IMG/VR virus record: IMGVR_UViG_3300037502_003770
Location: 186,001-250,000 of that record
DNA: 64,000 nucleotides
Strand: one strand, 5' to 3'
The first letter of the stretch is position 1, and the number at the start of each line of letters is the position of its first letter. The notes beneath the pieces were generated by a model. That model made no database searches and was not told the origin of the DNA. It saw only the letters and a list, made by a program, of their open reading frames with translations. Made by a program: the position numbers and the translations under genes. Of this stretch, positions 2,157 through 55,179 are shown one piece after another.

Positions 2157-3188
2157 ATGAAAAATTACGATAAGTTAAGTGATAATGAACATAAAATAGA
2201 TTTAATTTCTTTAAATGAATTTTTACTTGAGAAAGGAGATTCTTTTTTAAATAGAATAATTGAAACTCAAACAATAAAAAGAGAAGAAATTACAAAGGAA
2301 TTTTTTCAAGATAGATATGTATGGATATTTAAAGGAATTAAAGACCGTAGTGATTTTAATGGTGAAGATTTTCCATCAGAATGGTATACAGAAGGTATTA
2401 TAAATGGAATTATAAGAAGATTTGTTGATTATACTGAGTATGGTAGAATTAGTGAACATAAATTTTTATTATGTTTAAATTCAAAAATTCAAAATTATTA
2501 TTCTCTTTGCGAAAAAGCAGTTGATGATAATCCATTTAATATAGTATTAGTTGCTGAACGTGCTATTGATTATTCTCTTTGCGAAAAAGCAGTTAATGGA
2601 TATCCTAATGTTATAATAAGCATTATACCCGAAAAATTTAAAACATATTCATTATGGGAACTAGCTATTAGTAAAAATGGTTATTTATTAAAGGAAATAC
2701 CAAAAAATTTAATTGATTATTCTCTTTGTGAAAAAGCTATTAAAAATGATGTTGAAGCTTTACAGTTTGTACCAAAAAATATTGAGAATTATTATGATTT
2801 AGTAAAATTAACTTTTGAAAAGTCGAGTTATATAGTTGAAGCAGACTGGTTTCCAAAAGAATATATTTTGAAATTAATAAATGATGAGGATTACCCAAGT
2901 CGTAAAGAATATTTAACAAAACAATACTATTTAAAAGAAAATAACAACATGACAAAAAAAGATTTATTAATCGAGTTCATAAAAAAAGAAATAGCTAGAG
3001 TTTTAACCGAAGCAAAAAAATCAAAGAAAAAAGTTGGTCCCACAGGAAAAAAACTTATTAAAAGAAAAGATGGTTCTTATTCAGAAGAAGGTCTTTACGA
3101 TAATATCCGCAAAAACAAAGGTTCAGGAAAGAAACCAACCGCACAAATGAAAGCTCAAGAAAAGAAAATTAAAAAAGCAGAAAAATAA
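2157..3188 (+). CDS. DUF4116-like repeat protein (paralog family), in-frame fused to a basic C-terminal module
   Basis: N-cap IDLISLNEFLLEKGD, ~24-aa repeats IDYSLCEKAV...[IV]P, C-cap WFPKEYI; C-terminal 79 aa start at an internal ATG (2949). Confidence 0.75.
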   Translation: MKNYDKLSDNEHKIDLISLNEFLLEKGDSFLNRIIETQTIKREEITKEFFQDRYVWIFKGIKDRSDFNGEDFPSEWYTEGIINGIIRRFVDYTEYGRISEHKFLLCLNSKIQNYYSLCEKAVDDNPFNIVLVAERAIDYSLCEKAVNGYPNVIISIIPEKFKTYSLWELAISKNGYLLKEIPKNLIDYSLCEKAIKNDVEALQFVPKNIENYYDLVKLTFEKSSYIVEADWFPKEYILKLINDEDYPSRKEYLTKQYYLKENNNMTKKDLLIEFIKKEIARVLTEAKKSKKKVGPTGKKLIKRKDGSYSEEGLYDNIRKNKGSGKKPTAQMKAQEKKIKKAEK

Positions 3189-3189
3189 T

Positions 3190-3414
3190 ATGAAAAAATT
3201 ATTAGATATTTTATTTATTGGAAATATTGTATTAACATTAAAAAGAAATGTTAAACTTGGTATACCAAAAATTTCTTTATGGTTTATACTACCTTTAATA
3301 TTAATAGGATTATTTACTGTTGGAGTTGTATTTTCAGCTAGAATAATCCTATCTATTATATCATTAAGTGTATTTGTTTTTGGTTTATTTTATAATATTC
3401 GTTATATAAAATAA
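3190..3414 (+). CDS. Small membrane protein (two predicted TM segments)
   Basis: Hydrophobic stretches ISLWFILPLILIGLFTVGVVF and IILSIISLSVFVFGLFY; starts immediately after the upstream stop. Confidence 0.55.
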   Translation: MKKLLDILFIGNIVLTLKRNVKLGIPKISLWFILPLILIGLFTVGVVFSARIILSIISLSVFVFGLFYNIRYIK

Positions 3415-3415
3415 A

Positions 3416-3610
3416 TTACATCCATAAAGATTTACGATTCCAAAGATTTTTAAATAATCGAACCAAAGATGAGTTGACAATATTTTCAAACTCATCTTTG
3501 GTTTTTTTAGTCCCTATTTGTTTAGAAACTTCATCTTCAATCATTTTTTTATATGTATCTTTTATTTCAGATTTAATTTTATCTAACTCTTTTTTTGATA
3601 ATTCTGCCAT
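3416..3610 (-). CDS. Hypothetical protein downstream of portal
   Basis: Start overlaps the portal stop (TAATG at 3608-3612); charged helical 64-aa product. Confidence 0.65.
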   Translation of the reverse strand: MAELSKKELDKIKSEIKDTYKKMIEDEVSKQIGTKKTKDEFENIVNSSLVRLFKNLWNRKSLWM

Positions 3611-6015: not shown

Positions 6016-6049
6016 AAATTTTTTATTATCAAATAATACTTATATTATA

Positions 6050-6056: not shown

Positions 6057-6126
6057 TATTGTTAAAAATAACTATCTTTTTCTTAAATAGTAATTTCTTA
6101 CTATTTAGTAAAAACATTATTCTATA

Positions 6127-7398
6127 ATGAAATTTATTTATATAAAGAAAGAATTATCACCAAAAATATTTAATAACCAAAAAAATGTTAAAGCTATTAT
6201 AAGAAAGAAACTTATTGATTTAGCATATATGTATTTGAGAAACTATAATTTAAAAGATATAAAGGTTTTAGATATTAGAATGGTTGGTAGTTTATGTAAT
6301 TATAACTATAACGCTTCATCTGATTTAGATTTACATATAACAGTTGATTATAGTAAAATTTCTGATAATAAAGAGTTTGTTCTTGAATATTGTAAGACTT
6401 TAAGGAAGAATTGGTCTCAAAATAATAGAATTAAAATATACGGATTTCCTGTTGAAATCTTTATTGAAGATAAAAGTGTACCAATGAATGATAAAGGTGT
6501 ATATTCTTTATTAAAAAATAAATGGTTAAATGAACCAAAAAAAGTTTCAAGAGAAAAAATTAATTTAGATGATATAAAATCTTTATATATAAAATATAAA
6601 AGAACAATTAGAGATTTACTTAAAAGTGATGATATTAATGAATATAATAAATTTTCCGATGAATTAGGTTCTTTTAGAAAAAAAGGGTTATCTTCAGAAA
6701 AAGGTGAATATTCTGATGAAAATATTGTTTTTAAGTTATTAAGAAAATATAAAAAATTAGATTTAGTTACAAATAGAAAGAATAATCTTTTAAGAAGAAA
6801 ATATACTCTTAAAGAAGGTATTTTTAAAAAAGTAAAAAAACATTTAAAAGAAAGTGTTGTTTCATTAAATGGAAAATATAACTTAAAAAATATTACTAAA
6901 ATAAATACAAAAAATAATATAGATTTAGATTCTTTAAATAATTTTTTACTTGGGGAAGGTGATGATTTTTTAAATTTTTTATTAATGGTAAATGATTATA
7001 AAAAAAGGGATTATTCAAATAATAAAATACAAGAATATTATTTACGTGAAGCTTATTTTAAACCTTTACACCATACGTATCCTGAAGAATTATGGATGTA
7101 TTATTCATTTTGTGAAAGAGGTGTATCTATAAATGGTATGTGTTTAAAATATATACCTGAACAATTAAAAGATTATAATTTATGTAAAAAAGCTATTATT
7201 TCAGCACCTTTTGCATTAAATTATACACCTAAAACAATTGAAAATTATTATGAATTAGTAAAAATTGTTATGAGAGATTTAATTAAATTTAAAATGTACC
7301 GTAGAAGTATTATGTATAATTACGGTATAAGTGATGAATATATACCTCAATTAAAAAAAGATTTTCCTGAATATTTTAATCATGAAGATTATTCTTAA
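6127..7398 (+). CDS. Pol-beta-superfamily nucleotidyltransferase fused to a DUF4116-like repeat module
   Basis: MVGSLCNYNYNASSDLDLHI (GS...DxD) and third acidic residue in PVEIFIED; C-terminal third has IDLDSLNNFLLGEGD cap, KDYNLCKKAI repeats and EYIPQLKKDFP cap. Confidence 0.8.
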   Translation: MKFIYIKKELSPKIFNNQKNVKAIIRKKLIDLAYMYLRNYNLKDIKVLDIRMVGSLCNYNYNASSDLDLHITVDYSKISDNKEFVLEYCKTLRKNWSQNNRIKIYGFPVEIFIEDKSVPMNDKGVYSLLKNKWLNEPKKVSREKINLDDIKSLYIKYKRTIRDLLKSDDINEYNKFSDELGSFRKKGLSSEKGEYSDENIVFKLLRKYKKLDLVTNRKNNLLRRKYTLKEGIFKKVKKHLKESVVSLNGKYNLKNITKINTKNNIDLDSLNNFLLGEGDDFLNFLLMVNDYKKRDYSNNKIQEYYLREAYFKPLHHTYPEELWMYYSFCERGVSINGMCLKYIPEQLKDYNLCKKAIISAPFALNYTPKTIENYYELVKIVMRDLIKFKMYRRSIMYNYGISDEYIPQLKKDFPEYFNHEDYS

Positions 7399-7426
7399 AT
7401 AAAACTATTTAAATTAAAAGAATTAT

Positions 7427-8329
7427 ATGTCATTAGGTACAACTGGTATAGTAAAATCATCTACTGTAGATGTAAAAGATATTGAAATATTATATAGTTA
7501 TTCAGTTGATAGAACTGATAGTAATACAGTATTTACTAAAGTAGCGGATAGTTCTTCTTTTATAAGTAACATTTTTAGTCAAGATATAACAACTGAAAAA
7601 ATTCAAGGGTTATATCAATTAAAATTATCAAAAGATATTTTTAATAAAGTAGGAATTTATAATATATTAATTAGACCTAAGCAAATAAAACTCCCTATTT
7701 TAGATATAGGTATATTATCAGCTTTACCAAATGTAAAGGGTATAATTATTGATACAAATAATGAATTATTTATTAATGATGCTGAAAAATTATTATCAGG
7801 AGCTTTAACAGGTTATAGAATTGAATATATAAATACAGATAATTCTATTCAGTCAAATTTATTTAGAACGGTAACTTATTCTAATAGATGTGAACCTATT
7901 ATACAGAATCTACCTAATACAACAAATAAATCTGTTTCTTATAGATTAAATGATAATAGTGGATTACTTTTTTTAACAGTAACACCTTCTGTTAGTTCAT
8001 CTATTAAACCAAATTCAGAAATATTTATAGGTACACCAAATCAAAATATTATATTATCAAATACATTTTTTGACCCTTTATTTATTGAAATAGAGTTAAC
8101 AGAATATGATTTAGATACACTTGCTTTAGCTTTCTATGGTGAACAAACAAGAAGTACTCAAGACGGTGTAGTTACATATTATGATAAAGATAGAAATATT
8201 TATAAACAATTTACATTGTTTGAAATTAAAGATGAAAATAATACACCTTTATATGAAGTAAAAGAAGTTATTACTGATATAGATGAATCTAAATCATATG
8301 AAGCTATAACAAATGATATTATTAGGTAA
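7427..8329 (+). CDS. Hypothetical protein, probably virion-associated
   Basis: 300-aa ORF with CTATTTA at 7405-7411; beta-rich composition; no catalytic motif recognised. Confidence 0.7.
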   Translation: MSLGTTGIVKSSTVDVKDIEILYSYSVDRTDSNTVFTKVADSSSFISNIFSQDITTEKIQGLYQLKLSKDIFNKVGIYNILIRPKQIKLPILDIGILSALPNVKGIIIDTNNELFINDAEKLLSGALTGYRIEYINTDNSIQSNLFRTVTYSNRCEPIIQNLPNTTNKSVSYRLNDNSGLLFLTVTPSVSSSIKPNSEIFIGTPNQNIILSNTFFDPLFIEIELTEYDLDTLALAFYGEQTRSTQDGVVTYYDKDRNIYKQFTLFEIKDENNTPLYEVKEVITDIDESKSYEAITNDIIR

Positions 8330-9093
8330 TGAATAAATTACAAGAAAAAAGTGATGCACATAAAATAGATTTAGAATTGTTAAATAACTTCTTACTTGAG
8401 AAAGGGGATAATATGTTAGAGATGTTATTAATACGAAAATATATAATTCCTTTAGATTTAAAAAAAATAAAAATATATCTATCAATAGATGGTTGGTTAT
8501 TACAAGATATACCAGAAAAACATAAGACATATGAATTATGCAAAATAGCAGTCACTAAAACAGGAAATGCTATTTTGCACGTTCCTGAAAATTTAATAGA
8601 TTATAATCTTTGTGAAATAGCGGTTTTACAAAATGGGCGTTCATTAGATTACGTGCCTTATAAATTTAAAGATTATAATCTTTGTGAGAAAGCTGTTTCT
8701 AATTATGGTCATGCTATACAATATGTACCAAAAGAATTAATTGACTATTTTCTTTGTGAGAAAGCGGTTTCTACTCATGGTCAATCTTTAATGTATATTC
8801 CTAAAAAATTTATTGATTATCCGCTTTGTGAGAAAGCGGTTTCTAATGATGGTTGGGCTTTTCAACATGTACCAGAAAAATTTATAGATTACTCTTTAGT
8901 GAAATCTACTTATCAATATAGTATAGAAGCAATAAAACAAAACTGGTTTCCAAAGGAATATATACCTCAGTTAATAAAAGACTTCCCTGAACATAGAGAA
9001 TTTTTAGAAAACAGTTTACTTCAAGAATATATTTCCAAAGAAGTAAGAAAATTATTAAAAGAAACACTATTTACTAAAAAGAAATTATTATAA
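8329..9093 (+). CDS. DUF4116-like repeat protein (paralog family)
   Basis: N-cap IDLELLNNFLLEKGD, five clear 24-aa repeats (e.g. IDYPLCEKAVSNDGWAFQHVPEKF), C-cap WFPKEYIPQLIKDFP...EYISKEVRKLLKE. Confidence 0.8.
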   Translation: MNKLQEKSDAHKIDLELLNNFLLEKGDNMLEMLLIRKYIIPLDLKKIKIYLSIDGWLLQDIPEKHKTYELCKIAVTKTGNAILHVPENLIDYNLCEIAVLQNGRSLDYVPYKFKDYNLCEKAVSNYGHAIQYVPKELIDYFLCEKAVSTHGQSLMYIPKKFIDYPLCEKAVSNDGWAFQHVPEKFIDYSLVKSTYQYSIEAIKQNWFPKEYIPQLIKDFPEHREFLENSLLQEYISKEVRKLLKETLFTKKKLL

Positions 9094-9887
9094 TGGACAA
9101 AAATAAACTAATAGAACTGGTACAACAAATATATGGTTATTCAAAAATCATTGGTGAATCATTAAAAAACATTGGCGATGATGTAAGTAATTTACCTATT
9201 GATTTGGAGAATGATTTAAATTCTATTGTTTATCAATTAAAAGATTATAAAGAACAAATAGTAAAAAATCTATATGGTAGTAAATTAAATGAACTAGCAA
9301 AAAAGAAAAAAACTACCACACCTGTAGAAAAAGGTCCAGATATTGTAACAAAAGATAGACAACAAAATAAAGAAAGAACTAAACCTGTTCCTTTAACAGA
9401 TGAACAACTTAAAAAATATAAAATAGAGCTACAAAAATTTATTAACCAAAATACAAACGATATTGCTTCTTTAAAAGATATTTTTGATGATATATTTCTT
9501 ATATATGAAAGATACTCTAGTACAGAAAGTGATAAAATAGAAAATAATATTGATTTAAAAATAAACTATGTTAATCAGTTATTAACTTTAACAAATAATG
9601 CTATTGATATAATAAAAAGTTTAAAAAGTAAAAATAATGTATGTTTTTATTTATTCATGTATGATATATTAACTGATTCTTCAAATGATGATTCAACCTT
9701 TAAATTTAATGAATTTCTTTTCGCAATAAAATCTTTCTATAATAATTTAATTGCTCAAGATTTTTTTGAAAATAATAGAAAAATATATTCTGAATATAAA
9801 ATAATAAACTATAACGATTTCTTAGTTGCTCTTGAAAATTCTATTAATAGATTTGCAAACTTTAATGATTTAGATAATCGTTTTTAA
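9093..9887 (+). CDS. Hypothetical protein
   Basis: 264-aa helical ORF; CTATTTA at 9067-9073 inside the upstream gene's 3' end. Confidence 0.7.
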   Translation: MDKNKLIELVQQIYGYSKIIGESLKNIGDDVSNLPIDLENDLNSIVYQLKDYKEQIVKNLYGSKLNELAKKKKTTTPVEKGPDIVTKDRQQNKERTKPVPLTDEQLKKYKIELQKFINQNTNDIASLKDIFDDIFLIYERYSSTESDKIENNIDLKINYVNQLLTLTNNAIDIIKSLKSKNNVCFYLFMYDILTDSSNDDSTFKFNEFLFAIKSFYNNLIAQDFFENNRKIYSEYKIINYNDFLVALENSINRFANFNDLDNRF

Positions 9888-11266: not shown

Positions 11267-12058
11267 ATGTTAAATAATTTACAAGAAAAAAGTGATTTAA
11301 AACAAATAGATTTAGAATCTTTAAATAATTTTTTGCTTGAGAAAGGGGATAGTTTTTGTGATACTTTACTTCAAATAAAATCATATAAAAAAATTGATTA
11401 TTCATCAGATAATATACAAAAATATTATTATACATTAAAATTTAAGGATGTTAATTCTTTTCCAAAACAATTATGGTATCATGATTCTTTTTGTGAAAAA
11501 ATGTTGGGTAGAGACAGCGGAAATATAAAACTTATACCTAAAACTTCAAATAATTATTATAATTTTTGTAAAATGGCTGTTACTCATAATCCATTTAATA
11601 TAAAACATATTGATTCAGAGTTTATTGATTATAATCTTTGTAAGATTGCAGTATCAAATATTTATACAACTTTAAATTTAATACCAAAAAAATTTATTGA
11701 TTATAATCTTTGTAAGATTGCAGTATCAAATAATTATAGTAATTTACAGTATGTACCTAAAAATATTGAAAATTACTACCTTATTTGTTTATTAGCTGTA
11801 TATAAAAAGGGTTCAGCTTTAGAATTTGTCCCCAAAAATATAGATAAATATTACACAATATTAAAATTAGCTTTTGAAACTTATAGATATATAATTATAC
11901 AAGATTGGTTCCCAAAAGAATATATACCTCGATTAATAAAAGACTTTCCTGAAGATAAAGAATTTCTTGAGCGATATATTCTTAAAGAATATATTTCCAA
12001 AGAAGTAAAGAAATTTTTAAAAGAATACCTATTTAAAGAAAAATTATATGTTAAATAA
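11267..12058 (+). CDS. DUF4116-like repeat protein (paralog family)
   Basis: N-cap IDLESLNNFLLEKGD, repeats IDYNLCKIAVSN, C-cap WFPKEYIPRLIKDFP...LKEYISKEVKKFLKE; CTATTTA at 11246-11252. Confidence 0.8.
   Translation: MLNNLQEKSDLKQIDLESLNNFLLEKGDSFCDTLLQIKSYKKIDYSSDNIQKYYYTLKFKDVNSFPKQLWYHDSFCEKMLGRDSGNIKLIPKTSNNYYNFCKMAVTHNPFNIKHIDSEFIDYNLCKIAVSNIYTTLNLIPKKFIDYNLCKIAVSNNYSNLQYVPKNIENYYLICLLAVYKKGSALEFVPKNIDKYYTILKLAFETYRYIIIQDWFPKEYIPRLIKDFPEDKEFLERYILKEYISKEVKKFLKEYLFKEKLYVK
11621..11732 (+). repeat. Exact 40-bp direct repeat, period 72 bp
   Basis: tttattgattataatctttgtaagattgcagtatcaaata at 11621-11660 and 11693-11732. Confidence 0.9.
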
Positions 12059-12659
12059 TTTTGACAAACTATCTAATAATAATCATAATATTGATTTAAT
12101 CTCTTTAAATAAATTCTTACTTGAAAAAGGTGATAATTTTTTAGAAAATCTTATTGATAATAATAAATTTATAAAAAAAGAAGATATAACAAAAGAGTTT
12201 TTTCAAAAGAAATATCGAACAATATTTGATGGTATATTTAGTGTTGATGATAGTTTTTCTTTCACAGGAGAAGATTTTCCTGTTGAGTATTATAATGAAA
12301 AAATAATAAAAAATCTTGTTGAAGAATATAATAAGTTTGGTAAATATTTATTATTTTTAAATTCAAAATTAGATATATATTTTCAATTAGCTAAATATAC
12401 TATTACAACTAAGGCTTCTTGGATGTTAATATACATACCTAAAACAATAGAAAATTATTATTCTTTAGTAAAACTTGCATTTGAAAAAGATAATAATATA
12501 ATTAGAGAAGAATGGTTCCCAAAAGAATACATTCCTAAATTAATAAATGATTACCCTCAAAATACTGATTTTTTAAAGAAATATTTACTTAAAGAATATA
12601 TTTCCAAAGAAGTAAGAAAATTTTTAAAAGAATACTATTTAAATAAAAATAAACAATAA
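12048..12659 (+). CDS. DUF4116-like family paralog with few repeats
   Basis: IDLISLNKFLLEKGD and WFPKEYIPKLINDYP...LKEYISKEVRKFLKE caps; N-half closely resembles ORF 2157; CTATTTA at 12029-12035. Confidence 0.8.
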   Translation: MLNNFDKLSNNNHNIDLISLNKFLLEKGDNFLENLIDNNKFIKKEDITKEFFQKKYRTIFDGIFSVDDSFSFTGEDFPVEYYNEKIIKNLVEEYNKFGKYLLFLNSKLDIYFQLAKYTITTKASWMLIYIPKTIENYYSLVKLAFEKDNNIIREEWFPKEYIPKLINDYPQNTDFLKKYLLKEYISKEVRKFLKEYYLNKNKQ

Positions 12660-13873: not shown

Positions 13874-14542
13874 ATGAGAAAATTAACATTATTAGAAGCG
13901 AATCAAGAAGGTTATGGATTATTAAAAGAATCTGATGCTGGTATTGTAGAAATAGAAAGAAATCAACACTTAATAAAAGAAAATTATAAGGACATGTTTT
14001 CTGATAATGGTAGTATATTTGTTAATTGTATTTTACAAAAAGCTGATACTCAAAATAGAAATGGTAGGATTTATCCAAAAAATATATTAGAAAAAGAAGT
14101 AAATAATTATATAAAATTAGTTAAAGAAAGAGCTTCACTTGGTGAAACCGACCACCCTGATACTGCTGTAGTTTCTTTAAATGACCCATCTCATTTAATA
14201 ACAAAAGTTTGGTGGGAAGGAAATACATTATTAGGGACATTAGAATTAATAACATCACCAGCATATATAGAAAGAAGAGATATTCAAGTTAAGGGTGATA
14301 TGATTGCAAATTTATTAAGTAAAGAAATTAAATTAGGCATTTCTTCAAGAGGTTTAGGTTCAGTAAAAAAAGTAAATGGTGCAAATATAGTACAAAGTGA
14401 TTTTGAATTAGTTTGTTTTGATATAGTATCATCACCATCAACTCCTGGTGCTTATTTATATCAAGAAACTATTAAACTTAATGAACAAGTAAATAAAATT
14501 AATAATAGTTTAAATAATAAATTAAAAAACTTTTTATCATAA
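13874..14542 (+). CDS. Prohead core protease (T4 gp21-like)
   Basis: QKADTQNRNGRIYP, LGETDHP (catalytic His), GISSRGLGS (catalytic Ser), FDIVSSPSTPGAY. Confidence 0.93.
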   Translation: MRKLTLLEANQEGYGLLKESDAGIVEIERNQHLIKENYKDMFSDNGSIFVNCILQKADTQNRNGRIYPKNILEKEVNNYIKLVKERASLGETDHPDTAVVSLNDPSHLITKVWWEGNTLLGTLELITSPAYIERRDIQVKGDMIANLLSKEIKLGISSRGLGSVKKVNGANIVQSDFELVCFDIVSSPSTPGAYLYQETIKLNEQVNKINNSLNNKLKNFLS

Positions 14543-14545: not shown

Positions 14546-15730
14546 ATGATTACAATAAAAAGACTTAGTGAAGTAGAAAATTATAAAAAAGAAATAAGTA
14601 TTTTTTTATTAAAAGAAGAATCACCTGTTGTTGGGGATAAAAGACTTACAGGTAATGCAATATTACAATTTATAAAACCAATATATGATGCAAATAATTC
14701 TATTGTTTTATTAGATAATGAAAAAATAGTTGGTTGTTTAATAGGTGCAAAAGGTAATCAAACTTCACTTAAATCATATGGTTTAGATAATCAATTTAAT
14801 GTAGAAAATGAATTAAAAAATAATACTTTTATTGATTTTTTATATTTTTATATTGAAAAAGAATACAGAAAAGATAGGAATGATTATAAAATGTGTTTAT
14901 ACGCTTTTAATAATATTGTTAAAGGGAAATATAAATATATTACTATTGGTGTCGTTGATTCTATTAATACACATAATTATTGGCAGAAATTTTTTAAATT
15001 TAAATTATTATTTGATTTAGGTGGTGCAAAATATTATTACTTAGATACAGATACAATTTTAAAAGAATTTAAAATTCATAATAAAAATATTCTTTTAGAA
15101 AATAAAATTAGAACTTTAGTAAAAGAGTATATTAACCCTTATATGTTAAAGTCAAAATATCTTTCTCCTAAAGATGAAGATAAACCTTATCAAATAACAG
15201 ATAAAGAAAGAAATATTATTTCTAAATGGAGTGAACGTTCTTATAATAGAAATGGTATTAATGTTAGTTTTTATAATATTAATAAAGAAACTTTAAATTT
15301 AAATATTAGTAAAATTCCTATTTCTGCAAAAATTATTAAAGATAATAATACAAAAACAATGCAGTTTGCTGTTACTTATTCTTGTATTATTAATAATGAA
15401 AAAGAAGCTTTAATTACAGTAAGAAGTACAACTAAAAAAAGATTTAATGATAAAACAAAAATAACTTTTGTTTTATATGATAATTTTTTACTTACACCTA
15501 ATCCTGAATTAATTTTAATAAGTAAACCATATAGTAAATCAGGTAATAGTCGTCATAAATCTGATTTAATTAGTTTAATTAAAAATACAAGGGATTATTT
15601 ATCTAAAAGAATTAATAATATGTTAGAAAAGGGTAAATTATTACAACACCCTTTTACTAAAGAAGGAATTGATTTAGATGAATTTGATGATTTTTTTAAT
15701 ATAGACCTTTCAAATTACCATATTTCTTAA
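14546..15730 (+). CDS. Hypothetical protein with GNAT-like N-terminal domain
   Basis: KIVGCLIG...FLYFYIEKEYRK...NTHNYWQKF resembles the GNAT strand/motif A/motif B order; divergent. Confidence 0.5.
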   Translation: MITIKRLSEVENYKKEISIFLLKEESPVVGDKRLTGNAILQFIKPIYDANNSIVLLDNEKIVGCLIGAKGNQTSLKSYGLDNQFNVENELKNNTFIDFLYFYIEKEYRKDRNDYKMCLYAFNNIVKGKYKYITIGVVDSINTHNYWQKFFKFKLLFDLGGAKYYYLDTDTILKEFKIHNKNILLENKIRTLVKEYINPYMLKSKYLSPKDEDKPYQITDKERNIISKWSERSYNRNGINVSFYNINKETLNLNISKIPISAKIIKDNNTKTMQFAVTYSCIINNEKEALITVRSTTKKRFNDKTKITFVLYDNFLLTPNPELILISKPYSKSGNSRHKSDLISLIKNTRDYLSKRINNMLEKGKLLQHPFTKEGIDLDEFDDFFNIDLSNYHIS

Positions 15731-15759: not shown

Positions 15760-17208
15760 ATGAGCAAAAGTAAAATTATTAAAGATTCTATTATTGAAAT
15801 AGAAAATATTAAAGAAGAAGCTAAATTATTAGCTAAAGAAGAAATTTTAAACGAAGTTCAAGAATCAATAGAACAACGTACTAAACAATTATTTGAAGAA
15901 AAATTGAAAGCACTAGAAGAAAGTGAAGAACTTGATGAAGAATTTACTACTAGTGAAATAAATATAAATGAAGAAGATTGTGGTTGCGATGATAAAGATG
16001 AAAAACCACTTGAAGAAAAAATAAATAAAGAAAAAACAGATTTAAAAAATAAAATGAAAAAAAATAAACTAAATTTGAAAGAAGAAGAAATTTCTTTAGA
16101 TGAAATGTTTCATGATGATATGAATGAAGGTGAAAATGATGATATTGATATCGAAGCATTGCACCAAAGTGGTGAAATAAGTGATGAAGCTTATAATTTA
16201 TGGAAACAAACTTACGGTGATAAAAACAACAATAATAATATGCAAGAAATTGACGAAACTTGGGATGAAAATAGTCTAATGGAATTTTTAAACGAATTAG
16301 ATATGGAAGATGAAACCGAAGAAATGCCTTCTGATGAAGAAGATATGGAGGGTGATGTTGAAAATATTGAAGGAGAAGAATTACCATCAGAAGATGAATT
16401 AGATAATGAAGAAATACCTTCTGATGAAGAAGATATGGAAATGGATGATGAAGAATTTGATTTTGATGATATTGAATTTGATATTGAAGACGATATGGAA
16501 GGTGAAGATTTCTCTGATGAAGATATGGAAATGGGTGATGAAGAATTTGATTTTGATGAAGAAGAAGATGAACTTGAAGATATGGATTCAGAAGATATGA
16601 ATTTTGATTCAGAAGAAGAAGATTTAGAAGATATGGATAATATCGAAGGTGAAGATGAATTTGAAGAAATAGATGATTTGGAAGAAGCTTTAGCTTATCC
16701 TCATCAATTACATAAAAATGTGGGTGGTAAGAGCTTTCCACAAAGAGACGGTGCACCAGAAAGACGTTCTAATATGAACGAAGATATTAAGAGACTTAAA
16801 AAGTTAGTGGAATCTGTTGTAAATGAAAATAAGACCTTGAAATCTAAGGTACAAAAAACTGAGGCTCTTGAAGCTTTATTACAAGAAACAAAAAATAAAT
16901 TGTATGATACAATGGTATTAGCACAAAAAACTGTTTATGCGAATAAAGTTTTATTTGAAAATACTCTTACTAATGATGAAAAAGCTGAAGTAATGAAAGC
17001 TTTTAGTAAGGCTGGCTCTAAAGATGAAATTGTTTCATTAAATGAAAGTTTTAATTCTAAATTTAATGGTACTAAAAGAACACTTAATACTAGCATAAGT
17101 AAAGTAATTTCTACAAGTAAAGGTGTTTTAAAAGAACATACTATTAGTGATGAAGATTCAAATACTAGTCGTATGAAAAACCTAATAAATTACAAACCAA
17201 AAAAATAA
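15760..17208 (+). CDS. Prohead scaffolding/core protein
   Basis: Between protease and capsid genes; coiled-coil ends, long D/E-rich centre with repeats PSDEEDME and DEEFDFD; CTATTTA at 15739-15745. Confidence 0.8.
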   Translation: MSKSKIIKDSIIEIENIKEEAKLLAKEEILNEVQESIEQRTKQLFEEKLKALEESEELDEEFTTSEININEEDCGCDDKDEKPLEEKINKEKTDLKNKMKKNKLNLKEEEISLDEMFHDDMNEGENDDIDIEALHQSGEISDEAYNLWKQTYGDKNNNNNMQEIDETWDENSLMEFLNELDMEDETEEMPSDEEDMEGDVENIEGEELPSEDELDNEEIPSDEEDMEMDDEEFDFDDIEFDIEDDMEGEDFSDEDMEMGDEEFDFDEEEDELEDMDSEDMNFDSEEEDLEDMDNIEGEDEFEEIDDLEEALAYPHQLHKNVGGKSFPQRDGAPERRSNMNEDIKRLKKLVESVVNENKTLKSKVQKTEALEALLQETKNKLYDTMVLAQKTVYANKVLFENTLTNDEKAEVMKAFSKAGSKDEIVSLNESFNSKFNGTKRTLNTSISKVISTSKGVLKEHTISDEDSNTSRMKNLINYKPKK

Positions 17209-19078: not shown

Positions 19079-19104
19079 AAAGGGTACTTTTTTAAGTACC
19101 CTTT
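19079..19104. terminator. Bidirectional terminator between convergent capsid and nuclease genes
   Basis: AAAGGGTACTT-TTTT-AAGTACCCTTT stem-loop. Confidence 0.75.
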
Positions 19105-22343: not shown

Positions 22344-22364
22344 AAGTTTAATTAATATATTAAA

Positions 22365-22993: not shown

Positions 22994-22999
22994 TATTTG

Positions 23000-23206: not shown

Positions 23207-23218
23207 AATAAAAAGTCA

Positions 23219-34264: not shown

Positions 34265-34798
34265 ATGAAAAAAAATACTTTAAATGAAGTAATCTATAAA
34301 CAAATAATAAAGGAGCTTTTATTAGAAGCTACTCAGGAATATATTATTAAAATGATAAAATCCGCAATTAAAAGTAGAAGAATATGGATTATTGATTATA
34401 AAGGTGAGAAAAAAATTGGTGCTGATGGTAAAGCTACTTGGAAAGTGTTACCAGGAAAAAGATATGTTGAAATTTACGCTTTAGGTACAATTAAAAATAG
34501 TAAAGAAGGTAAACTAGCTGTTAGAGCTTGGATAAGACCAGTATCAGTTAGTAGAACACCAAGAGGTTATGATACACAGGGTCAAAATACTGGTGAATAT
34601 CATCCTGATAAATTAAAACACAGACCAGGTTGGAGACTTTTTAGAGTAGATAGAATTATATCTATAACACCAACTATTCAATATTCAGAAGGATTCCCAC
34701 CTAAGTATAATCCTAATGATAAACAATTAAATATAATAATGTCAATGGATAAAAATTACACAGTAAATTATCCAATGAAACAAAAAAATAAATTATAA
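34265..34798 (+). CDS. WYL-like domain protein
   Basis: IWIIDYKG...GKRYVEIYALG...LAVRAW...GWRLFRVDRI pattern. Confidence 0.6.
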   Translation: MKKNTLNEVIYKQIIKELLLEATQEYIIKMIKSAIKSRRIWIIDYKGEKKIGADGKATWKVLPGKRYVEIYALGTIKNSKEGKLAVRAWIRPVSVSRTPRGYDTQGQNTGEYHPDKLKHRPGWRLFRVDRIISITPTIQYSEGFPPKYNPNDKQLNIIMSMDKNYTVNYPMKQKNKL

Positions 34799-43575: not shown

Positions 43576-44913
43576 TTAATCATATGAATGACAAGTAGAT
43601 TTATTTTTATCACATATATCTAATTTGGAACTTAATTTAGTATATTTTGGTTTTTGTTCACTATTAGTTTTATTTTTTGCAATAACTCTCATTTTATTTC
43701 TATCTTGCGAAACTTGTACCCATTTATGATATGAACCATCTTTAATAATAAAACCATTTATTTCAATAGGTTCACTTTGCCCCATAGAATTAGATTTATA
43801 TTTTAGAGGTATATTACTTTTTTGTAATTTTTGAATATACCAATCTAAATAACCATCTTTATTTCTTTTAGAAACCCATCTATGAGTTGGATTATTTTTA
43901 CTATATACTGTATCGCCTTCATTATTGGGTTCATAATTTGGGAATCCATTTTCGATTTTATCTTTTGTTATAAACGTTGTATCTGAATTTTTACTAATAC
44001 TAGGTGCTACAGATGATTGATTAAAACCACCATAACTCTGTGCATTAGCCTGATTATTCATACCTAATAAAGAAGATGCTGCTAATGCAGTACCAGCTAA
44101 AGCTGATTTCCATCCTTCATTAAGTTCTTCTTTTTTAAAGTAAATTTCTATTAATTTTTCAAGTTTATCTAACTGAGAAGAATCACTATTTTCAAAAAGA
44201 TGATTAATTTTTTTAGAAATACTTTCTTTCTTTTTAGATTTAATTACTTCTTCTTTTAAGATAGATTTTACCTCTCTTTCAATAAATTCGTTTAGTGATA
44301 TTTTTTTCATAATTTGTTTTTCGTATATTAATTGTTCTAATTTTTCATAATTTATATTTAAAGCATCTAATGCAATTTGTACTTCTTTTAAACATTCTTT
44401 TCTACCACCACCAAAAAGTATTACATTATTAACAGACATATCATTAATAAAATCCATCAACTCAGGTATATGAATATAACCACGTTCACTACTTAAAAAA
44501 TCAATTATTTCTTCACTTGTTAAATCATTTTCTTTTTTAAATTGATTCCATTTTGATTTATTTAAATCACGTGCATCATTAATAGTATTTTTGTACATAA
44601 ATCTAACTAAAGCAATAATATCGCTATGGTCAATATTACTATCCATACAGTCACGAAAAAAAGCATACCCTTTATCATAAAATTTAATACTTTCAAGACA
44701 CTCTTCATCAGCACCTTTTTCATATAACCAATGAATATATTCTGATTCAGTTTCAAAACCCATAGAATCACCATTATAAAATAATACTATTTTATTAGTG
44801 GAATAATTTTTATTTAAAAAATTAATAAAATTTCTAATCATTTCTCTCCCAATATATTGTTCATATGCTGGTTGTATATCAATGGAGAAAATAACTCTAT
44901 TATTGTAATTCAT
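43576..44913 (-). CDS. Isochorismatase/cysteine-hydrolase-like domain plus C-terminal module with hydrophobic leader
   Basis: IFSIDIQP...ILFGGGRKECL..V..AL pattern; linker LNEFIEREVKSILKEE; LNE-GWKSALAGTALAASSLLG; CTATTTA (minus) at 44928-44934. Confidence 0.55.
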   Translation of the reverse strand: MNYNNRVIFSIDIQPAYEQYIGREMIRNFINFLNKNYSTNKIVLFYNGDSMGFETESEYIHWLYEKGADEECLESIKFYDKGYAFFRDCMDSNIDHSDIIALVRFMYKNTINDARDLNKSKWNQFKKENDLTSEEIIDFLSSERGYIHIPELMDFINDMSVNNVILFGGGRKECLKEVQIALDALNINYEKLEQLIYEKQIMKKISLNEFIEREVKSILKEEVIKSKKKESISKKINHLFENSDSSQLDKLEKLIEIYFKKEELNEGWKSALAGTALAASSLLGMNNQANAQSYGGFNQSSVAPSISKNSDTTFITKDKIENGFPNYEPNNEGDTVYSKNNPTHRWVSKRNKDGYLDWYIQKLQKSNIPLKYKSNSMGQSEPIEINGFIIKDGSYHKWVQVSQDRNKMRVIAKNKTNSEQKPKYTKLSSKLDICDKNKSTCHSYD

Positions 44914-53200: not shown

Positions 53201-53581
53201 TCTTCACAATTACAAAATGTTTTTAGCGGTAATACTTATTATTTAAATCAACAAATGGAACCTATACAAGTATTAAACCATTTAGAAAAAATATATAATA
53301 ATGGTGTACCTTATACTGGTACTGGTTGGCAATTTGGTACTAGTACAGTACAAACATCAGTAAAAACATTAAATATTAATACATTTAAAATAACCAATAA
53401 AGCTTTATCATCAATACCAACTGGTTTTACATTTAATGGTTCAGATGGTACGTTTACTACACCTAATTCACCAGCTAATATATTAACTAGGATTGGCGAG
53501 CTTCGTTATGTTTTAACAACACAAAGAGCGTCAGGTGGTACATCTACAAATTTAAGATATAGATGGTTTATAAATTTATAA
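50279..53581 (+). CDS. Large Asn-rich virion protein with LRR/beta-solenoid-like segments; candidate receptor-binding protein
   Basis: 1100 aa; recurring LxL/IxxNx[LI] segments (LSLSNNNF, FYWENNNL, LNISNSGL, FNISNTPI). Confidence 0.55.
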   Translation: MNEIIKNNDNIYMYPLNGNNSYFLLNKTEKTIKPITNTSNFNNEFNLLNFWFQFDVNNFNTEQTIISLSGEINSASGLRIYKDTDNIIKVRVSTDLGGGQTYIKVNNLITATFNKLYCIILHRDTVGYKIVIMYDNIIYNTSVFRQTIINNNNIRFDNTNSNINNTSNFLSFNIFTRYIFGSNIGGITNIFNENSPNISNNIPGVSNFIVNHSINLLSQTTNMVGFISNINFIKLYYNNNITIDNKTLFNEIYNILYNNNIPKKLNNINKYNLGKLEFDFDKNIKINENLFIHKQNIDVINVNREQGTLDYNTYINRNKYFGTINNTSIDKRPMYFYDTNPDANLSNYIYPEMGNIVINNLLTGSTSTISNFNIKDKDNNTLLHNNINNITINNSNITDSTISGSVYNFIIRNIPANNSLWKLDYTFIPLDNNRVSPNFWFNNARLSDFVFEHTNQLGKLNIQYLSLSNNNFASTSKTTIKTLFHEKNNITFDNLYINNSIIRFDENINSSYSINTANINLNNNLRNSTGTYSFNNNHLTPIGNSAFTVNFSGNCTNFYWENNNLTKIEGQGVVDLNFVFTPVTQKQLGLFNVNNSNIRSLTLTSTRSDSTLINNSTTNGFNISNNLYNTGFTEFFNTLSLNNFNNLDQLNISNSGLYGSFDWNNYSIRQRFGNFNNANSTLNFGLNTFHRFISLPSARTLNFTTTNDYSLNNFKLETSQIDSRNYTGTTLSFSSNSCTFLNVDDNDIKERITFSSNVNNLSINNPDSNVLSFTGSPKYTYQLEFNQPNLLNLTTLDLSPKFPTNPIYNTCYFNGNLIFNNSLYSTSYNINTSNVGYNQYFLSGNTFLQNTVGLIIPQNITGNSINFIGSTGIHLNNLTGNTTLILNSSNSNLTGITFQTAGTCTITSFNISNTPILNLNIPSNNRISSGVFNAVNLPYINSNTGYTFPLGDIIQSLTINIGSTIQTSTFVLNNSSQLQNVFSGNTYYLNQQMEPIQVLNHLEKIYNNGVPYTGTGWQFGTSTVQTSVKTLNINTFKITNKALSSIPTGFTFNGSDGTFTTPNSPANILTRIGELRYVLTTQRASGGTSTNLRYRWFINL

Positions 53582-53610
53582 TACTATTTATAAATATAAT
53601 TCTAAATAAA

Positions 53611-54015
53611 ATGAAATTAAAAAAATATAAAAGGTTAGATAAAACATCTAAAATAGAAGAAGGTTTGATAGACCCTGAAACATTTTCTTATAATAGAAGT
53701 AGTGTTCCATCAGACGGAACTGCCGAAATTAAATCTATTAAGACAACTGATGATTTAGCAAATATGACTAAGCAAGGACCTGATTTATATTTTAATTATT
53801 ATGGTACAAATGCTATGGGTTCGAGAGCTATCTTCTTTGAAGAAGAGGATTTAGTAAATGAAGAATTAATAGATAAAGATGATAATATTGATGAAGAAAT
53901 GTTAAAACTAATAGATAAAATTGGTGATTATTTAGAAACATACGAAGGTAATAAAAAACAAAAATTAAATAAGATATTAAAAAATATATCAAATAAAATA
54001 AAAGAAACTTTATGA
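53611..54015 (+). CDS. Hypothetical protein (start revised from 53563)
   Basis: CTATTTA at 53584-53590 sits 20 nt before ATG 53611, favouring that start. Confidence 0.65.
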   Translation: MKLKKYKRLDKTSKIEEGLIDPETFSYNRSSVPSDGTAEIKSIKTTDDLANMTKQGPDLYFNYYGTNAMGSRAIFFEEEDLVNEELIDKDDNIDEEMLKLIDKIGDYLETYEGNKKQKLNKILKNISNKIKETL

Positions 54016-54404
54016 TAAACAAAGAAATTTTAATAGAAATTAATAATGATTATAAAATCAAATTCTATAATAAAAGTAATGAATTAAATAAATATTTAAG
54101 GAATAACTATATTTATGATGTAAAATTATTTTCTTTAAATGAGAGTACTAATATTTTTGATTTAAAAAAATATTTAAAAAAATATAATATAAATTATAAA
54201 TTTGATTTTACTAAAAATACTGTTATTTTATTAAACCCAGATAATGATGGTTTATATTTAATAATTAATAGATTTAAAAATGAAATTACTAATTATTTTA
54301 AATACGATTTTAAATTAGGTTTAGAAGAAAAAACAAAAGAAACAATACTAGAAAATCATGTCAAACTCAAATTTATATCAAAATCTATCTTTAAAAATTC
54401 CTAG
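54012..54404 (+). CDS. Hypothetical protein
   Basis: ATGA overlap with upstream gene. Confidence 0.6.
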   Translation: MINKEILIEINNDYKIKFYNKSNELNKYLRNNYIYDVKLFSLNESTNIFDLKKYLKKYNINYKFDFTKNTVILLNPDNDGLYLIINRFKNEITNYFKYDFKLGLEEKTKETILENHVKLKFISKSIFKNS

Positions 54405-55179
54405 TAATATATTAGGTTATATTGAAAAAATAAAAGAAAATAATCCTAATCATAACGGTATTAAGAGAGCTAATTATTTATTAGATAATAAAGAATTATC
54501 ATATAGTAATGCTAAAAGAATAAAAAATTATTTTGATAGTTATAATAACTCTGAAGATAAAGATGAGATTACATATAATTTGTATGGTGGTGATTTAATG
54601 AAAAATTTTTTAAATCATAATTTAAAAATTAATAGAAAAAATGATAATACTATAAAAAATGTTAAAGGTTTGGTAGATAATAATTCACATAGAAAAAGAA
54701 AACCTGTTGATTCAAAAGTAAAAATAAATAATAATTTTAAGAAAAATGATTTTATTAGGGATTTAAAACCTAAAACAAATCTTTTTGAAAATGATAATTT
54801 ATATGAAAATTCATCTACAATTGTAGTAATTAGAAATACTGAAGGTAAAATACTTTTTTTAAGAAGAGCTGATGATGATTATTGGATGAAATCTCATTGG
54901 GGTTATCCTGGTGGAATGATTGATGAGGGTGAAACACCTATTCAGGCGGCTATTAGAGAAACTTATGAAGAAGCTGGTTTAGTTGTTTCTGATATTAAAT
55001 TTGTAACAGAATTATCATCAAATGGAACAAAACTTTATATTTTTAAAGGAACTACTGAAAATGAAAATGTTAAAATTTCACATGAACATTCAGAATATAA
55101 ATGGATTTCTATTGAAGAAATAAATAATTTAGATAAGAAAACACCTAATATCGAAAGAATAGCTATTCTAACTAGATAA
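54358..55179 (+). CDS. Nudix hydrolase with N-terminal extension
   Basis: Nudix box GGMIDEGETPIQAAIRETYEEAGL, WGYPGG, SHEHSEYKW. Confidence 0.9.
   Translation: MSNSNLYQNLSLKIPSNILGYIEKIKENNPNHNGIKRANYLLDNKELSYSNAKRIKNYFDSYNNSEDKDEITYNLYGGDLMKNFLNHNLKINRKNDNTIKNVKGLVDNNSHRKRKPVDSKVKINNNFKKNDFIRDLKPKTNLFENDNLYENSSTIVVIRNTEGKILFLRRADDDYWMKSHWGYPGGMIDEGETPIQAAIRETYEEAGLVVSDIKFVTELSSNGTKLYIFKGTTENENVKISHEHSEYKWISIEEINNLDKKTPNIERIAILTR

What the first reader, a model, noticed from the sequence alone, without database searches (positions are those of the whole stretch)
2949..55179. Recurrent amphipathic [LI]xxEVxxxLxE / [LI]xE signature suggests an arsenal of capsid-packaged enzymes
Seen: MCP MLNE|S; EFIKKEIARVLTE (2949); EYISKEVRKLLKE (8329, 11267, 12048); LLTEATFKRLIKTFINE (12674); LLENKIRTLVKE (14546); LNEVIYKQIIKELLLE (34265); LNEFIEREVKSILKEE (43576). 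The motif sits at termini or between unrelated domains (nucleotidyltransferase, GNAT-like, WYL-like, hydrolase-like). Known: T4 internal proteins and Alt carry capsid-targeting leaders removed by gp21 at [ILV]-x-E and are injected with the DNA. Inference: this helix is a portable capsid-targeting/cleavage tag that recruits diverse effector domains.
Basis: inference. Interest (0 to 1): 0.6.

Follow-up and report, generated by a model that had tools for sequence, protein, structure and literature searches.

The report
Boundary peptide of jumbo-phage head-protein family

Summary
All cited strings exist, but they are not one motif. Five of them (genes at 2157, 8329, 11267, 12048 and 43576) are copies of a discrete 15-residue module, L-x-E-[YFH]-I-x-K-[EQ]-V-[KR]-K-L-L-K-E. 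It occurs 15 times in 14 proteins of the 312.7-kb genome, with HMM scores of at least 22 against noise below 6. The sites at 12674, 14546 and 34265 are not members.

Plain [LI]xE is 1.18 times the shuffle expectation in late and in non-late ORFs alike, so it carries no signal.

The module closes cassettes of a late-promoter-driven multigene family (DUF4116 solenoids with a second conserved N-terminal module) interleaved with terminase, portal, S77 prohead protease and gp23-like capsid genes. It also flanks an ADP-ribosyltransferase-like domain on both sides. A shortened form separates all seven cassettes of a 1,659-residue protein.

Conservation is at the protein level. The short tails after the module instead encode the next gene's CTATTTA promoter.

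Best reading (confidence about 0.45): a T4 CTS/Alt-like propeptide and boundary element cut by the prohead protease. No proteomic, RNA or docking evidence exists. Most carriers are repeat proteins, not enzymes.

Verdict: partly supported; a new variant of a known kind.

The parts
2157..3188 (+). Family gene (343 aa): N-module 2196-2240, DUF4116 repeat, 15-mer module 2967-3011 (LIEFIKKEIARVLTE), then a 58-residue lysine-rich tail. An internal CTATTTA at 2927-2933 and an in-frame ATG at 2946 lie just upstream of the module.
6127..7398 (+). Family gene (423 aa): N-terminal domain with a weak nucleotidyltransferase hit, internal N-module 6919-6963 (here FLLGEGD, no Glu), DUF4116 repeat. No 15-mer.
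8329..9093 (+). Family gene (254 aa): N-module 8365-8409, four DUF4116 repeats, 15-mer 9019-9063. The tail ..ETLFT.. encodes CTATTTA (9067-9073), the promoter motif of the next gene, 9093-9887.
11267..12058 (+). Family gene (263 aa): N-module 11306-11350, DUF4116 repeats, 15-mer 11981-12025. The tail ..EYLFK.. encodes CTATTTA (12029-12035) for gene 12048. AF2 model pLDDT 88: an alpha-solenoid with the 15-mer inside a long terminal helix (aa 228-261).
12048..12659 (+). Minimal family gene (203 aa): N-module 12090-12134, 15-mer 12588-12632. The tail ..EYYLN.. encodes CTATTTA (12635-12641) for gene 12674.
43576..44913 (-). 445-aa late gene in the tail/baseplate region. Aa 1-200 form an isochorismatase-like domain that stands alone (about 200-230 aa) in other phages. 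The 15-mer module is at aa 207-221 (nt 44251-44295), exactly at the domain boundary. Aa 225-445 are an unknown domain.
13874..14542 (+). Prohead protease, Peptidase_S77 (T4 gp21 family): the presumed enzyme acting on L-x-E sites. Its own N-terminus carries LLE-8 and LLKE-19, conserved in relative L006.
15760..17208 (+). Scaffold-like protein (482 aa): coiled-coil ends, extremely acidic centre, 19 [LI]xE sites against 13 expected. A candidate docking partner (gp22 analogue, by position and composition only).
17284..19053 (+). gp23-like major capsid protein. A candidate propeptide cleavage site LNE|S lies at aa 58-60 (nt 17455-17463), identical in relative L006. The 60-residue length is comparable with T4's 65-residue gp23 propeptide.
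   Evidence: PMC9026906
12674..13777 (+). 367-aa late gene directly upstream of the protease. Its N-terminus MKKLLTE..FINE has two [LI]xE 13 residues apart and is conserved in L006 and L007. It is NOT a copy of the 15-mer; a possible separate T4-CTS-like leader, unproven.
34265..34798 (+). 177-aa ORF with an N-terminal double [LI]xE (LNE-8, LLE-21). Not a copy of the module, no late-promoter motif of its own, no family assignment.
14546..15730 (+). 394-aa ORF after the protease. An N-terminal LLKE-24 exists but is not conserved in the L006 orthologue.

Best explanation
The recurrent signature is a discrete peptide module. Its long form is L-x-E-[YFH]-I-x-K-[EQ]-V-[KR]-K-L-L-K-E. Its short form is [LF]-[QN]-E-S-K-S-L-L-K-E. 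It marks the boundaries of protein cassettes in a late-expressed multigene family of a 312.7-kb, 22% GC, T4-like jumbo phage.

Shown:
- A standard cassette is a conserved N-terminal module (KIDLxSLNxFLLEKGD), then DUF4116 alpha-solenoid repeats, then the 15-mer.
- The same 15-mer also brackets an ADP-ribosyltransferase-like domain and follows an isochorismatase-like domain.
- The short form separates all seven cassettes of a 1,659-residue protein.
- The family is interleaved with the terminase, portal, S77 protease, scaffold and capsid genes.
- Its genes lie in transcription units driven by the structural genes' promoter motif.
- Conservation of the module is at the protein level.

Inferred: the amphipathic helix tethers these proteins to the prohead core. 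The gp21-family protease then cuts after one or both invariant L-x-E triplets. That would release mature cassettes inside the capsid for ejection with the DNA, as for the T4 CTS-bearing internal proteins and for Alt, which is trimmed at both ends. The loose [LI]xE pattern elsewhere is a by-product of a Leu/Ile/Glu/Lys-rich proteome.
For: Discreteness and recurrence
- 15 copies in 14 proteins, HMM scores 22-30, no other real hit at or above 6 bits. The strict regex gives 12 hits against 0.36 expected.
- 13 further copies occur in the syntenic relatives L006 and L007.

Protein-level selection
- Third codon positions are the least conserved (0.65 against 0.78 and 0.83). Synonymous codon sharing is 0.72, in the range that genome codon usage gives (0.3-0.83 per residue).
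- Both modules are 73.5% identical between paralogues; the rest of the proteins is 33.6%.

Late and head context
- CTATTTA lies 20-30 nt upstream of the ATG for MCP, protease, portal, sheath, tube and 12 family genes. The other four family genes are immediately downstream in such units.
- Peptidase_S77 scores E 1e-27 and Gp23 E 1e-67.
- The relatives keep the same gene order, but the family slots change size: 423/452/626, 254/535/791, 263/308/444 and 203/391/494 aa.

Portability and boundary position
- Module positions in all carriers.
- P0037 (genome 160506-161165) has the module at aa 6-20 and 194-208 around an ART fold. Foldseek gives Tpt1 7yw4 at E 9e-5 and DarT at probability 0.9-0.98.
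- In 43576-44913 the module follows a domain that stands alone elsewhere.
- Six constant 10-mers separate the seven cassettes of the 1,659-aa protein. Three of them directly precede ART-like domains.
- L007 has a 791-aa protein made of three fused cassettes with ..LLKE|N.. and ..LLKE|S.. junctions.

L-x-E as the constant feature
- Every HMM-detected copy has E3 and E15, while position 8 varies (E/Q/K). The short form deletes five residues yet keeps both triplets.
- LLKE occurs 41 times against 6.6 expected.
- Outside the family, 7 of 21 LLKE end at residues 15-30 against 1.6 expected. These include the protease itself.

Comparative evidence
- In other phage contigs, unrelated neighbouring proteins share a genome-specific N-terminal leader ending in L-x-E. 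L004 has MKY[LI]K.F..FL.E on four proteins, and one leader ends ..FEQFIAE like T4's. L008 has M[KR]LT.LLTE on ART-like paralogues and on a different ART-PolyVal-like protein.

Literature
- T4's 10-residue CTS suffices for packaging, and gp21 cuts after [LI]-x-E (PMC9026906).
- Alt is cut at ITE-6 and LTE-619 (PMC5694885).
Against: - There is no direct evidence of packaging or cleavage. The genome comes from a subsurface metagenome with no RNA runs and no virion proteome. The protease-tail docking job gave no answer.
- The T4 CTS is N-terminal and about 10 residues long. This module is C-terminal in 10 of 15 copies and longer.
- In the AF2 model the module continues the last helix of the solenoid (aa 228-261), so it could simply be structural.
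- The whole peptide is conserved, not only L-x-E, as expected of a binding or packing helix.
- In the ART-like family (2,849 clusters) the L-x-E-G-[IL]-S-[DP]-[IV]-[VL]-Y-H signature is kept in internal copies too. It also occurs in jumbo phages of other lineages whose proteases may have other specificities, so that L-x-E may be intrinsic to the domain.
- The Glu of the N-module (FLLE|KGD) is replaced by D, S, K, R or G in about 30% of copies.
- Most carriers have no recognisable enzymatic domain.
Confidence: 0.45

Rival explanations
1. Structural or oligomerisation helix only. The 15-mer and the N-module are capping or association helices of a rapidly duplicating DUF4116 family, spread to a few other domains by gene fusion. 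They let family members pack or associate, possibly as an internal body or outside the capsid altogether. They are neither targeting signals nor protease substrates.
For: The AF2 model places the 15-mer in a long helix continuous with the last repeat, with pLDDT falling only gradually from 96 to 52. The hydrophobic and the charged faces are both conserved. Most copies sit in paralogues. The N-module Glu is not invariant. L-x-E-G in the ART-like family is kept in internal copies and in other phage lineages.
Against: The module occurs N-terminal to an unrelated ART fold and after an isochorismatase-like domain. The 10-residue short form keeps both L-x-E triplets while losing five helix residues, and it recurs at every cassette junction of a 1,659-aa protein. 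A capping helix would not be expected at both ends of, or between, unrelated folds.
Confidence: 0.3
2. Processing separators without a targeting role. The L-x-E pairs are protease sites that split multi-cassette precursors and trim termini, while incorporation into the prohead is mediated by something else, for example the N-module or the DUF4116 solenoid.
For: Separators sit at every junction of the fused proteins. The N-module is equally conserved (73.5%) and N-terminal like T4's CTS. T4 work separates targeting residues from processing residues within the CTS (PMC9026906).
Against: The ART-like protein P0037 and 43576-44913 carry the 15-mer but have no N-module or DUF4116 repeat, so some other signal would still be needed for them.
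Confidence: 0.12
3. DNA-level element. The conserved 3' ends of family genes are promoter-bearing cassettes or recombination sites, and the peptide conservation is a by-product.
For: The tails directly after the module (YYLK, YLFK, TLFT, AIYK) are the CTATTTA promoter motif of the next gene, read in three different frames.
Against: This holds only for the tails. Within the 45 nt of the module, third codon positions vary most and codon sharing is in the range of genome codon usage. The module also occurs where no promoter follows: the N-terminus of P0037, and inside 6449-7915, 43576-44913 and 2157-3188. Sequences upstream of CTATTTA at MCP, sheath and tube show no similarity to the module's DNA.
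Confidence: 0.04
4. Compositional coincidence. In a proteome with 20% Leu+Ile, 7% Glu and 10% Lys, amphipathic helices with [LI]xE arise everywhere, and the reader strung unrelated ones together.
For: This holds for the generic signature. [LI]xE is expected about once per 72 residues. The 1.18x excess is the same in late and non-late ORFs. N-terminal [LI]xE is not enriched in late ORFs (Fisher p 0.39-0.6). The sites in 12674, 14546 and 34265 do not match the module HMM. About half of the N-terminal double sites belong to small non-late helical paralogues.
Against: It cannot explain the 15-mer (12 against 0.36 expected; HMM gap from 22 bits down to below 6) or the six identical separators.
Confidence: 0.05

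Closest known systems
T4 capsid targeting sequence (CTS) of internal proteins IPI-III, and gp21 processing of Alt
   Same: A gp21-family (S77) protease is encoded next to the genes. A short peptide shared by otherwise unrelated late proteins ends in [LI]-x-E. An ADP-ribosyltransferase-like cargo is flanked by the peptide at both termini, as Alt is cut at ITE-6 and LTE-619. The cargo loci are hypervariable between relatives.
   Different: The module is 15 residues (10 in the short form) with two L-x-E triplets. It is mostly C-terminal or between domains rather than N-terminal. The main cargo is a DUF4116 repeat family, not small basic proteins. Multi-cassette precursors of up to 1,659 aa have no T4 counterpart. 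Nothing has been shown experimentally.
Propeptide-bearing paralogous ejection and inner-body proteins of phiKZ-like jumbo phages (phiKZ, 201phi2-1, SPN3US)
   Same: Jumbo phages with many paralogous head-internal proteins whose propeptides are removed after Glu by a T4-related prohead protease. Propeptides can contain several cleavage motifs, and C-terminal autocleavage of the protease is documented (PMC5694885).
   Different: Their motif is S/A/G-x-E or A-x-E rather than L-x-E. There is no sequence relationship to this family, and the capsid lineage differs (this phage has a gp23-type MCP).
Encapsulin cargo-loading peptides
   Same: A short, mostly C-terminal peptide appended to diverse cargo that docks on the inside of an HK97-fold shell (from general knowledge).
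   Different: Those peptides are not cleaved, there is no protease or scaffold, and the sequences differ. This is an analogy only and was not tested here.
Pfam DUF4116 repeat proteins
   Same: The family bodies hit PF13475 above its gathering score. The predicted fold is an alpha-solenoid.
   Different: Pfam describes no function. The conserved N-module and the 15-mer are additions specific to this phage group: tblastn found no match among 50,697 phage records.

Membership tests
T4-type CTS / gp21-processed head-internal proteins | Phage encodes a gp21-family (Peptidase_S77) prohead protease and a gp23-type capsid | tested here: met
   PF03420 E 1.2e-27 for 13874-14542; PF07068 E 1.5e-67 for 17284-19053; PHROG head maturation protease E 8e-48
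T4-type CTS / gp21-processed head-internal proteins | Short N-terminal leader (about 10 aa) shared by unrelated proteins and ending in [LI]-x-E | tested here: inconclusive
   The module is shared by unrelated domains and ends in L-K-E. It is N-terminal only in P0037 (aa 6-20), and possibly after the internal ATG at 2946. Ten of 15 copies are C-terminal and three internal.
T4-type CTS / gp21-processed head-internal proteins | Late expression together with head-morphogenesis genes | tested here: met
   The same CTATTTA motif lies 20-30 nt upstream, as for MCP, protease, portal, sheath and tube. The genes are interleaved with terminase, portal and protease. 'Late' is inferred from this association, not measured.
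T4-type CTS / gp21-processed head-internal proteins | Proteolytic removal of the leader after Glu, and presence of the mature protein in virions | not testable with these tools
   No proteome and no RNA runs. The complex prediction gave no answer.
DUF4116 (PF13475) | Pfam profile match above the gathering score | tested here: met
   93.3, 44.0, 36.4 and 34.1 bits against a cut-off of 24.9 for 8329, 11267, 2157 and 6127. ORF 12048-12659 is below detection but aligns as a paralogue.
ADP-ribosyltransferase fold (Tpt1/KptA-DarT-like), for P0037 and three domains of the 1,659-aa protein (outside the window) | ART fold with a conserved aromatic-His, S-x-[ST] and acidic catalytic motif | tested here: inconclusive
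   The AF2 model has pLDDT of only 66. Foldseek gives Tpt1 7yw4 at E 9e-5 (TM 0.36/0.62) and DarT at probability 0.9-0.98. Y27 (of the V-Y-H motif), S64, E124, E126, D127 and R128 are invariant in the alignment; the His itself is Arg in two homologues. There is no Pfam or PHROG hit. Activity is untested.
   MTPAP-like_central scores 20.2 bits against a cut-off of 27. There is no PDB sequence match.
   No Pfam family at E up to 0.01 and no PDB match at E up to 1 for 14546-15730 and 34265-34798.

The most novel reading that the evidence does not exclude
The phage loads its capsid with a combinatorial set of cassettes: DUF4116 solenoids, up to four ART-like domains, and other domains. Some would be made as polyproteins of up to seven cassettes. 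The prohead protease would cut them apart inside the head at a constant bipartite L-x-E...L-L-K-E separator that also serves as the docking tag. This would extend the T4 CTS principle to C-terminal and inter-domain tags and to polyprotein processing of ejected effectors.
Probability: 0.25. Interest if true: 0.75.

Novelty: new variant of a known kind. Interest (0 to 1): 0.5.

Why it matters
If the module is a capsid-loading and processing tag, it would show that the T4 CTS principle extends beyond N-terminal leaders. The tag could sit at either end of a cargo or between cargos. A jumbo phage could package polyprotein precursors that are cut into many ejected units, including several ADP-ribosyltransferase-like proteins. 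That would give a sequence handle for predicting ejected proteins in uncultivated T4-like jumbo phages. It would also offer a new tag for loading foreign proteins into phage heads.

The negative part matters as well. In AT-rich phage proteomes, [LI]xE counts alone carry no information and should not be used to call gp21 substrates.

Tried and rejected
- **Generic motif enrichment.** [LI]xE, [LI]xE[AGS] and hydrophobic-[LI]xE were compared between late and other ORFs. Enrichment was the same, so the generic motif was rejected as a signal.
- **Phage records.** A tblastn of a family member against 50,697 phage records found no match.
- **Profile searches.** PHROG, Pfam and PDB-sequence searches of 7427, 9093, 12674, 14546, 15760, 34265, 34817 and 41534, and of neighbours at genome positions 166-186 kb, found nothing usable.
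- **Complex prediction.** Protease plus the C-terminal 46 residues of 12048-12659 gave score 0.00. The tool's verdict was 'no answer', so it counts neither for nor against binding.
- **Fold search of the DUF4116 model.** Against the PDB it returned only generic helical-repeat hits with E above 0.3.
- **C-terminal domain of 43576-44913.** Atlas search found no usable relative.
- **L004 as a T4-like phage.** I tried to confirm this by searching its record; the record is not held. What kind of virus L004 is remains open.
- **Sequencing runs.** The source is a subsurface metagenome. There are partial holders in aquatic and freshwater metagenomes and no RNA run.
- **DNA-level explanation of the module.** Rejected on codon evidence, but accepted for the tails after the module.
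- **N-terminal double [LI]xE.** 15 ORFs against 3.2 expected by shuffle. This is suggestive, but it was chosen after seeing the data and is inflated by a family of small non-late helical proteins, so it is not used as proof.

Full report
**Context**

The window is bases 186,001-250,000 of a single 312,694-bp contig with 22.3% G+C. The contig was recovered from a subsurface metagenome. Its proteome is dominated by Ile, Lys, Asn, Leu and Glu.

The window carries a T4-type virion module:
- large terminase, 381-2123
- portal with an intein, 3610-6015(-)
- Peptidase_S77 prohead protease, 13874-14542
- gp23-like major capsid protein, 17284-19053
- sheath, tube and a baseplate protein

It also carries RNA-repair genes (Pnkp and Hen1), Mom, TnpB and other genes. 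The capsid protein is at most 41% identical to any deposited phage. Its best match is a 484-kb uncultured phage.

**Checking the observation**

All quoted strings are present, but they do not form one class.

Genome-wide, [LI]xE occurs 1,582 times against 1,322 in shuffles. The 1.18-fold excess is identical in ORFs with the late-promoter motif and in all other ORFs. N-terminal [LI]xE is no more frequent in late ORFs.

The strict pattern [LI]..EV...L.E behaves differently: 12 hits against 0.36 expected. A profile of the 15-residue core finds exactly 15 copies in 14 proteins, with scores of 22-30. Real proteins give no further hit at or above the lowest cut-off tried, 6 bits. Reversed and shuffled decoys give essentially none: one reversed hit of 10 to under 12 bits.

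Five of the carriers lie in the window: 2157, 8329, 11267, 12048 and 43576.

**What the module belongs to**

The four C-terminal copies in the window are paralogues. They share three things:
- a second conserved element near the N-terminus (KIDLxSLNxFLLEKGD)
- DUF4116 repeats (Pfam, above threshold)
- the 15-mer a few residues before the stop codon

Gene 6127-7398 carries the N-module and a DUF4116 repeat behind an unrelated N-terminal domain.

Genome-wide there are 16 genes with one or both modules, plus one DUF4116-only gene. Together they make about 7,200 residues, roughly 7% of the genome. Most lie between 156 and 199 kb, around terminase, portal and protease.

Between paralogues both modules are 73.5% identical, whereas the rest of the proteins is 33.6% identical.

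An AlphaFold model of 11267-12058 (pLDDT 88) is an alpha-solenoid. The 15-mer lies in a long terminal helix whose confidence decays towards the end. The PDB has no specific structural relative.

**Protein-level or DNA-level conservation**

Within the 45 nt that encode the module, third codon positions are the least conserved. Synonymous codon sharing is in the range that genome codon usage gives. The peptide is therefore what is selected.

The short tails after the module are different. YYLK, YLFK, TLFT and AIYK are encoded by TAC TAT TTA AA, TAC CTA TTT AAA, ACA CTA TTT ACT and GCT ATT TAT AAG. That is one DNA motif, CTATTTA, read in three frames, and it sits 19-39 nt before the next gene's ATG.

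CTATTTA precedes 62 ORFs with a sharp peak 20-30 nt upstream. These include MCP, protease, portal, sheath, tube, baseplate genes, endolysin and 12 family genes. The other four family genes follow directly in such units. I take this to be the late promoter, by association only. All module carriers are therefore late genes.

**Portability**

- The module is not confined to DUF4116 proteins. Genome ORF 160506-161165 (P0037, 219 aa) has it at residues 6-20 and again at 194-208.
- The domain between those two copies models, with only moderate confidence (pLDDT 66), as an ADP-ribosyltransferase fold. The best PDB matches are Tpt1 (E 9e-5) and DarT. It belongs to a family of 2,849 clusters that occurs in several jumbo phages, all of them unannotated.
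- In 43576-44913 the module sits at residues 207-221. This is exactly where an isochorismatase-like domain ends; in other phages that domain is a free-standing protein of about 200 residues.
- The 1,659-residue protein at genome positions 161237-166216 consists of seven cassettes: four of the N-module type and three ART-like domains. Six nearly identical 10-mers, [LF][QN]E[SN][KN][SL]LLKE, separate them. This is a shortened module that keeps both L-x-E triplets.
- In two syntenic relatives (L006, L007) the conserved head genes are unchanged. The family slots between them vary in size (254/535/791 aa and so on) because cassettes are fused in frame through ..LLKE|N.. and ..LLKE|S.. junctions or gain ART-like domains.

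**Bearing on the T4 model**

In T4 the first 10 residues of IPIII suffice for packaging, and gp21 cuts after [LI]-x-E. An Asp at P1 blocks cutting but not targeting. Related phages carry varied proteins behind CTS-like leaders (PMC9026906). Alt, an ADP-ribosyltransferase, is cut at both ITE-6 and LTE-619 (PMC5694885).

The parallels here are:
- a gp21-family protease
- a candidate MCP site LNE-60, conserved in L006
- a peptide shared by unrelated late proteins
- two L-x-E triplets present in every copy the profile finds, while the central Glu varies
- an ART-like cargo bracketed at both ends

LLKE itself is six-fold over-represented. Outside the family it tends to end at residues 15-30, including in the protease. 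That test was chosen after seeing the data.

Other contigs that hold ART-like relatives show genome-specific leaders shared by unrelated neighbouring proteins:
- L004: MKY[LI]K.F..FL.E on four proteins, one of them ending ..FEQFIAE as in T4
- L008: M[KR]LT.LLTE on more than ten tandem ART-like paralogues and on a different ART-PolyVal-like protein

**Limits**

- None of this shows packaging or cleavage. The docking job returned no answer, and there are no RNA or protein data.
- The module is mostly C-terminal, unlike T4's CTS.
- The module may simply extend the last solenoid helix.
- In the ART-like family the L-x-E-G-[IL]-S-D-[IV]-V-Y-H signature persists in internal copies and in non-T4 lineages, so that triplet may be intrinsic to the domain.
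- The N-module's Glu is replaced in about 30% of copies.
- Most carriers have no recognisable catalytic domain.
- ORFs 12674-13777 and 34265-34798 do have N-terminal double [LI]xE sites, like the protease and P0037. Such sites number 15 against 3.2 expected, but about half belong to small non-late helical paralogues. Sequence alone cannot separate them from ordinary amphipathic helices. Only 12674 has supporting context: it is late, lies next to the protease, and its leader is conserved in the relatives.

**Verdict**

There is one real module and a noisy generic motif.

The best-supported mechanism is a boundary propeptide with two gp21-type sites that tethers late cassettes to the prohead core and is then cut. 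I put it at about 0.45. A purely structural or association helix is the main rival, at about 0.3.

This is a new variant of a known kind (T4 CTS and Alt; propeptide-bearing ejection proteins of jumbo phages). It is worth a proteomic or co-expression test.

Noticed in passing
window 9067-9073, 12029-12035, 12635-12641 (also genome 158345 and 158949 upstream regions): The CTATTTA late-promoter-like motif of the downstream gene is embedded in the last codons of the upstream family gene. It is read in three different frames (YYLK, YLFK, TLFT, AIYK), so the 'conserved' C-terminal tails are conserved as DNA, not as peptide.
   Followed up: yes
window 2927-2948: Inside ORF 2157-3188 a CTATTTA motif is followed 19 nt later by an in-frame ATG (aa 264). 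This could give an 80-residue, very lysine-rich protein whose N-terminus is the module (MTKKDLLIE..VLTE|AKKSKKK), reminiscent of T4's small basic internal proteins. No expression data.
   Followed up: partly
genome 161237-166216 (L001:11237-16216): A 1,659-aa protein built of seven cassettes, three of them ART-like domains, separated by six near-identical 10-mers ending in LLKE. It looks like a polyprotein.
   Followed up: partly
L008:8551-19176: A 29.5% GC phage contig with more than ten tandem paralogues (about 300 aa each) of the ART-like family. All start M-K-L-T-E-[IL]-L-T-E-R, and the H of the Y-H motif is replaced by R. The family has 2,849 clusters at 50% identity and no Pfam or PHROG model.
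   Followed up: partly
window 3610-6015 (-): The T4-type portal protein is interrupted by an intein (Pfam Intein_splicing, aa 367-596).
   Followed up: no
window 9915-11117 (-) and 30501-31736 (+): TnpB/IS605 OrfB genes, one inserted among the family genes of the head module. Both, and further copies elsewhere in the genome, are preceded by the same CTATTTA motif as the structural genes.
   Followed up: no
window 19092-20615 (-): A Mom-family domain fused to GIY-YIG and NUMOD1 domains lies directly downstream of the capsid gene. It is conserved in relative L006.
   Followed up: no
window 26173-30206 (-): A Pnkp (kinase-phosphatase-ligase) and Hen1 RNA-repair pair, followed by an AAA ATPase at 24710-25924.
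   Followed up: no
window 22026-24709 (-): A tandem array of eight small ORFs, several starting MKI.I(F/L).DN(F/Y).Y(I/V)E. This is another paralogous family of unknown function.
   Followed up: no
genome about 132,800-147,100 (outside the window): A run of small (80-200 aa) non-late ORFs with N-termini such as MKEKLIQEI.. and, in several, C-termini ..SLLDLQFIL... Their amphipathic N-terminal helices inflate counts of N-terminal [LI]xE and show why the short motif is unspecific.
   Followed up: partly
L004:844-13985: A TARA contig (42.5% GC; HSP70, DnaJ, PhoH). Several unrelated neighbouring proteins share an N-terminal leader MKY[LI]K.F..FL.E, and one (ATP-grasp-like) begins MGKFKLFEQFIAE, close to T4's MKTYQEFIAE. 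What kind of virus the contig belongs to could not be checked.
   Followed up: partly
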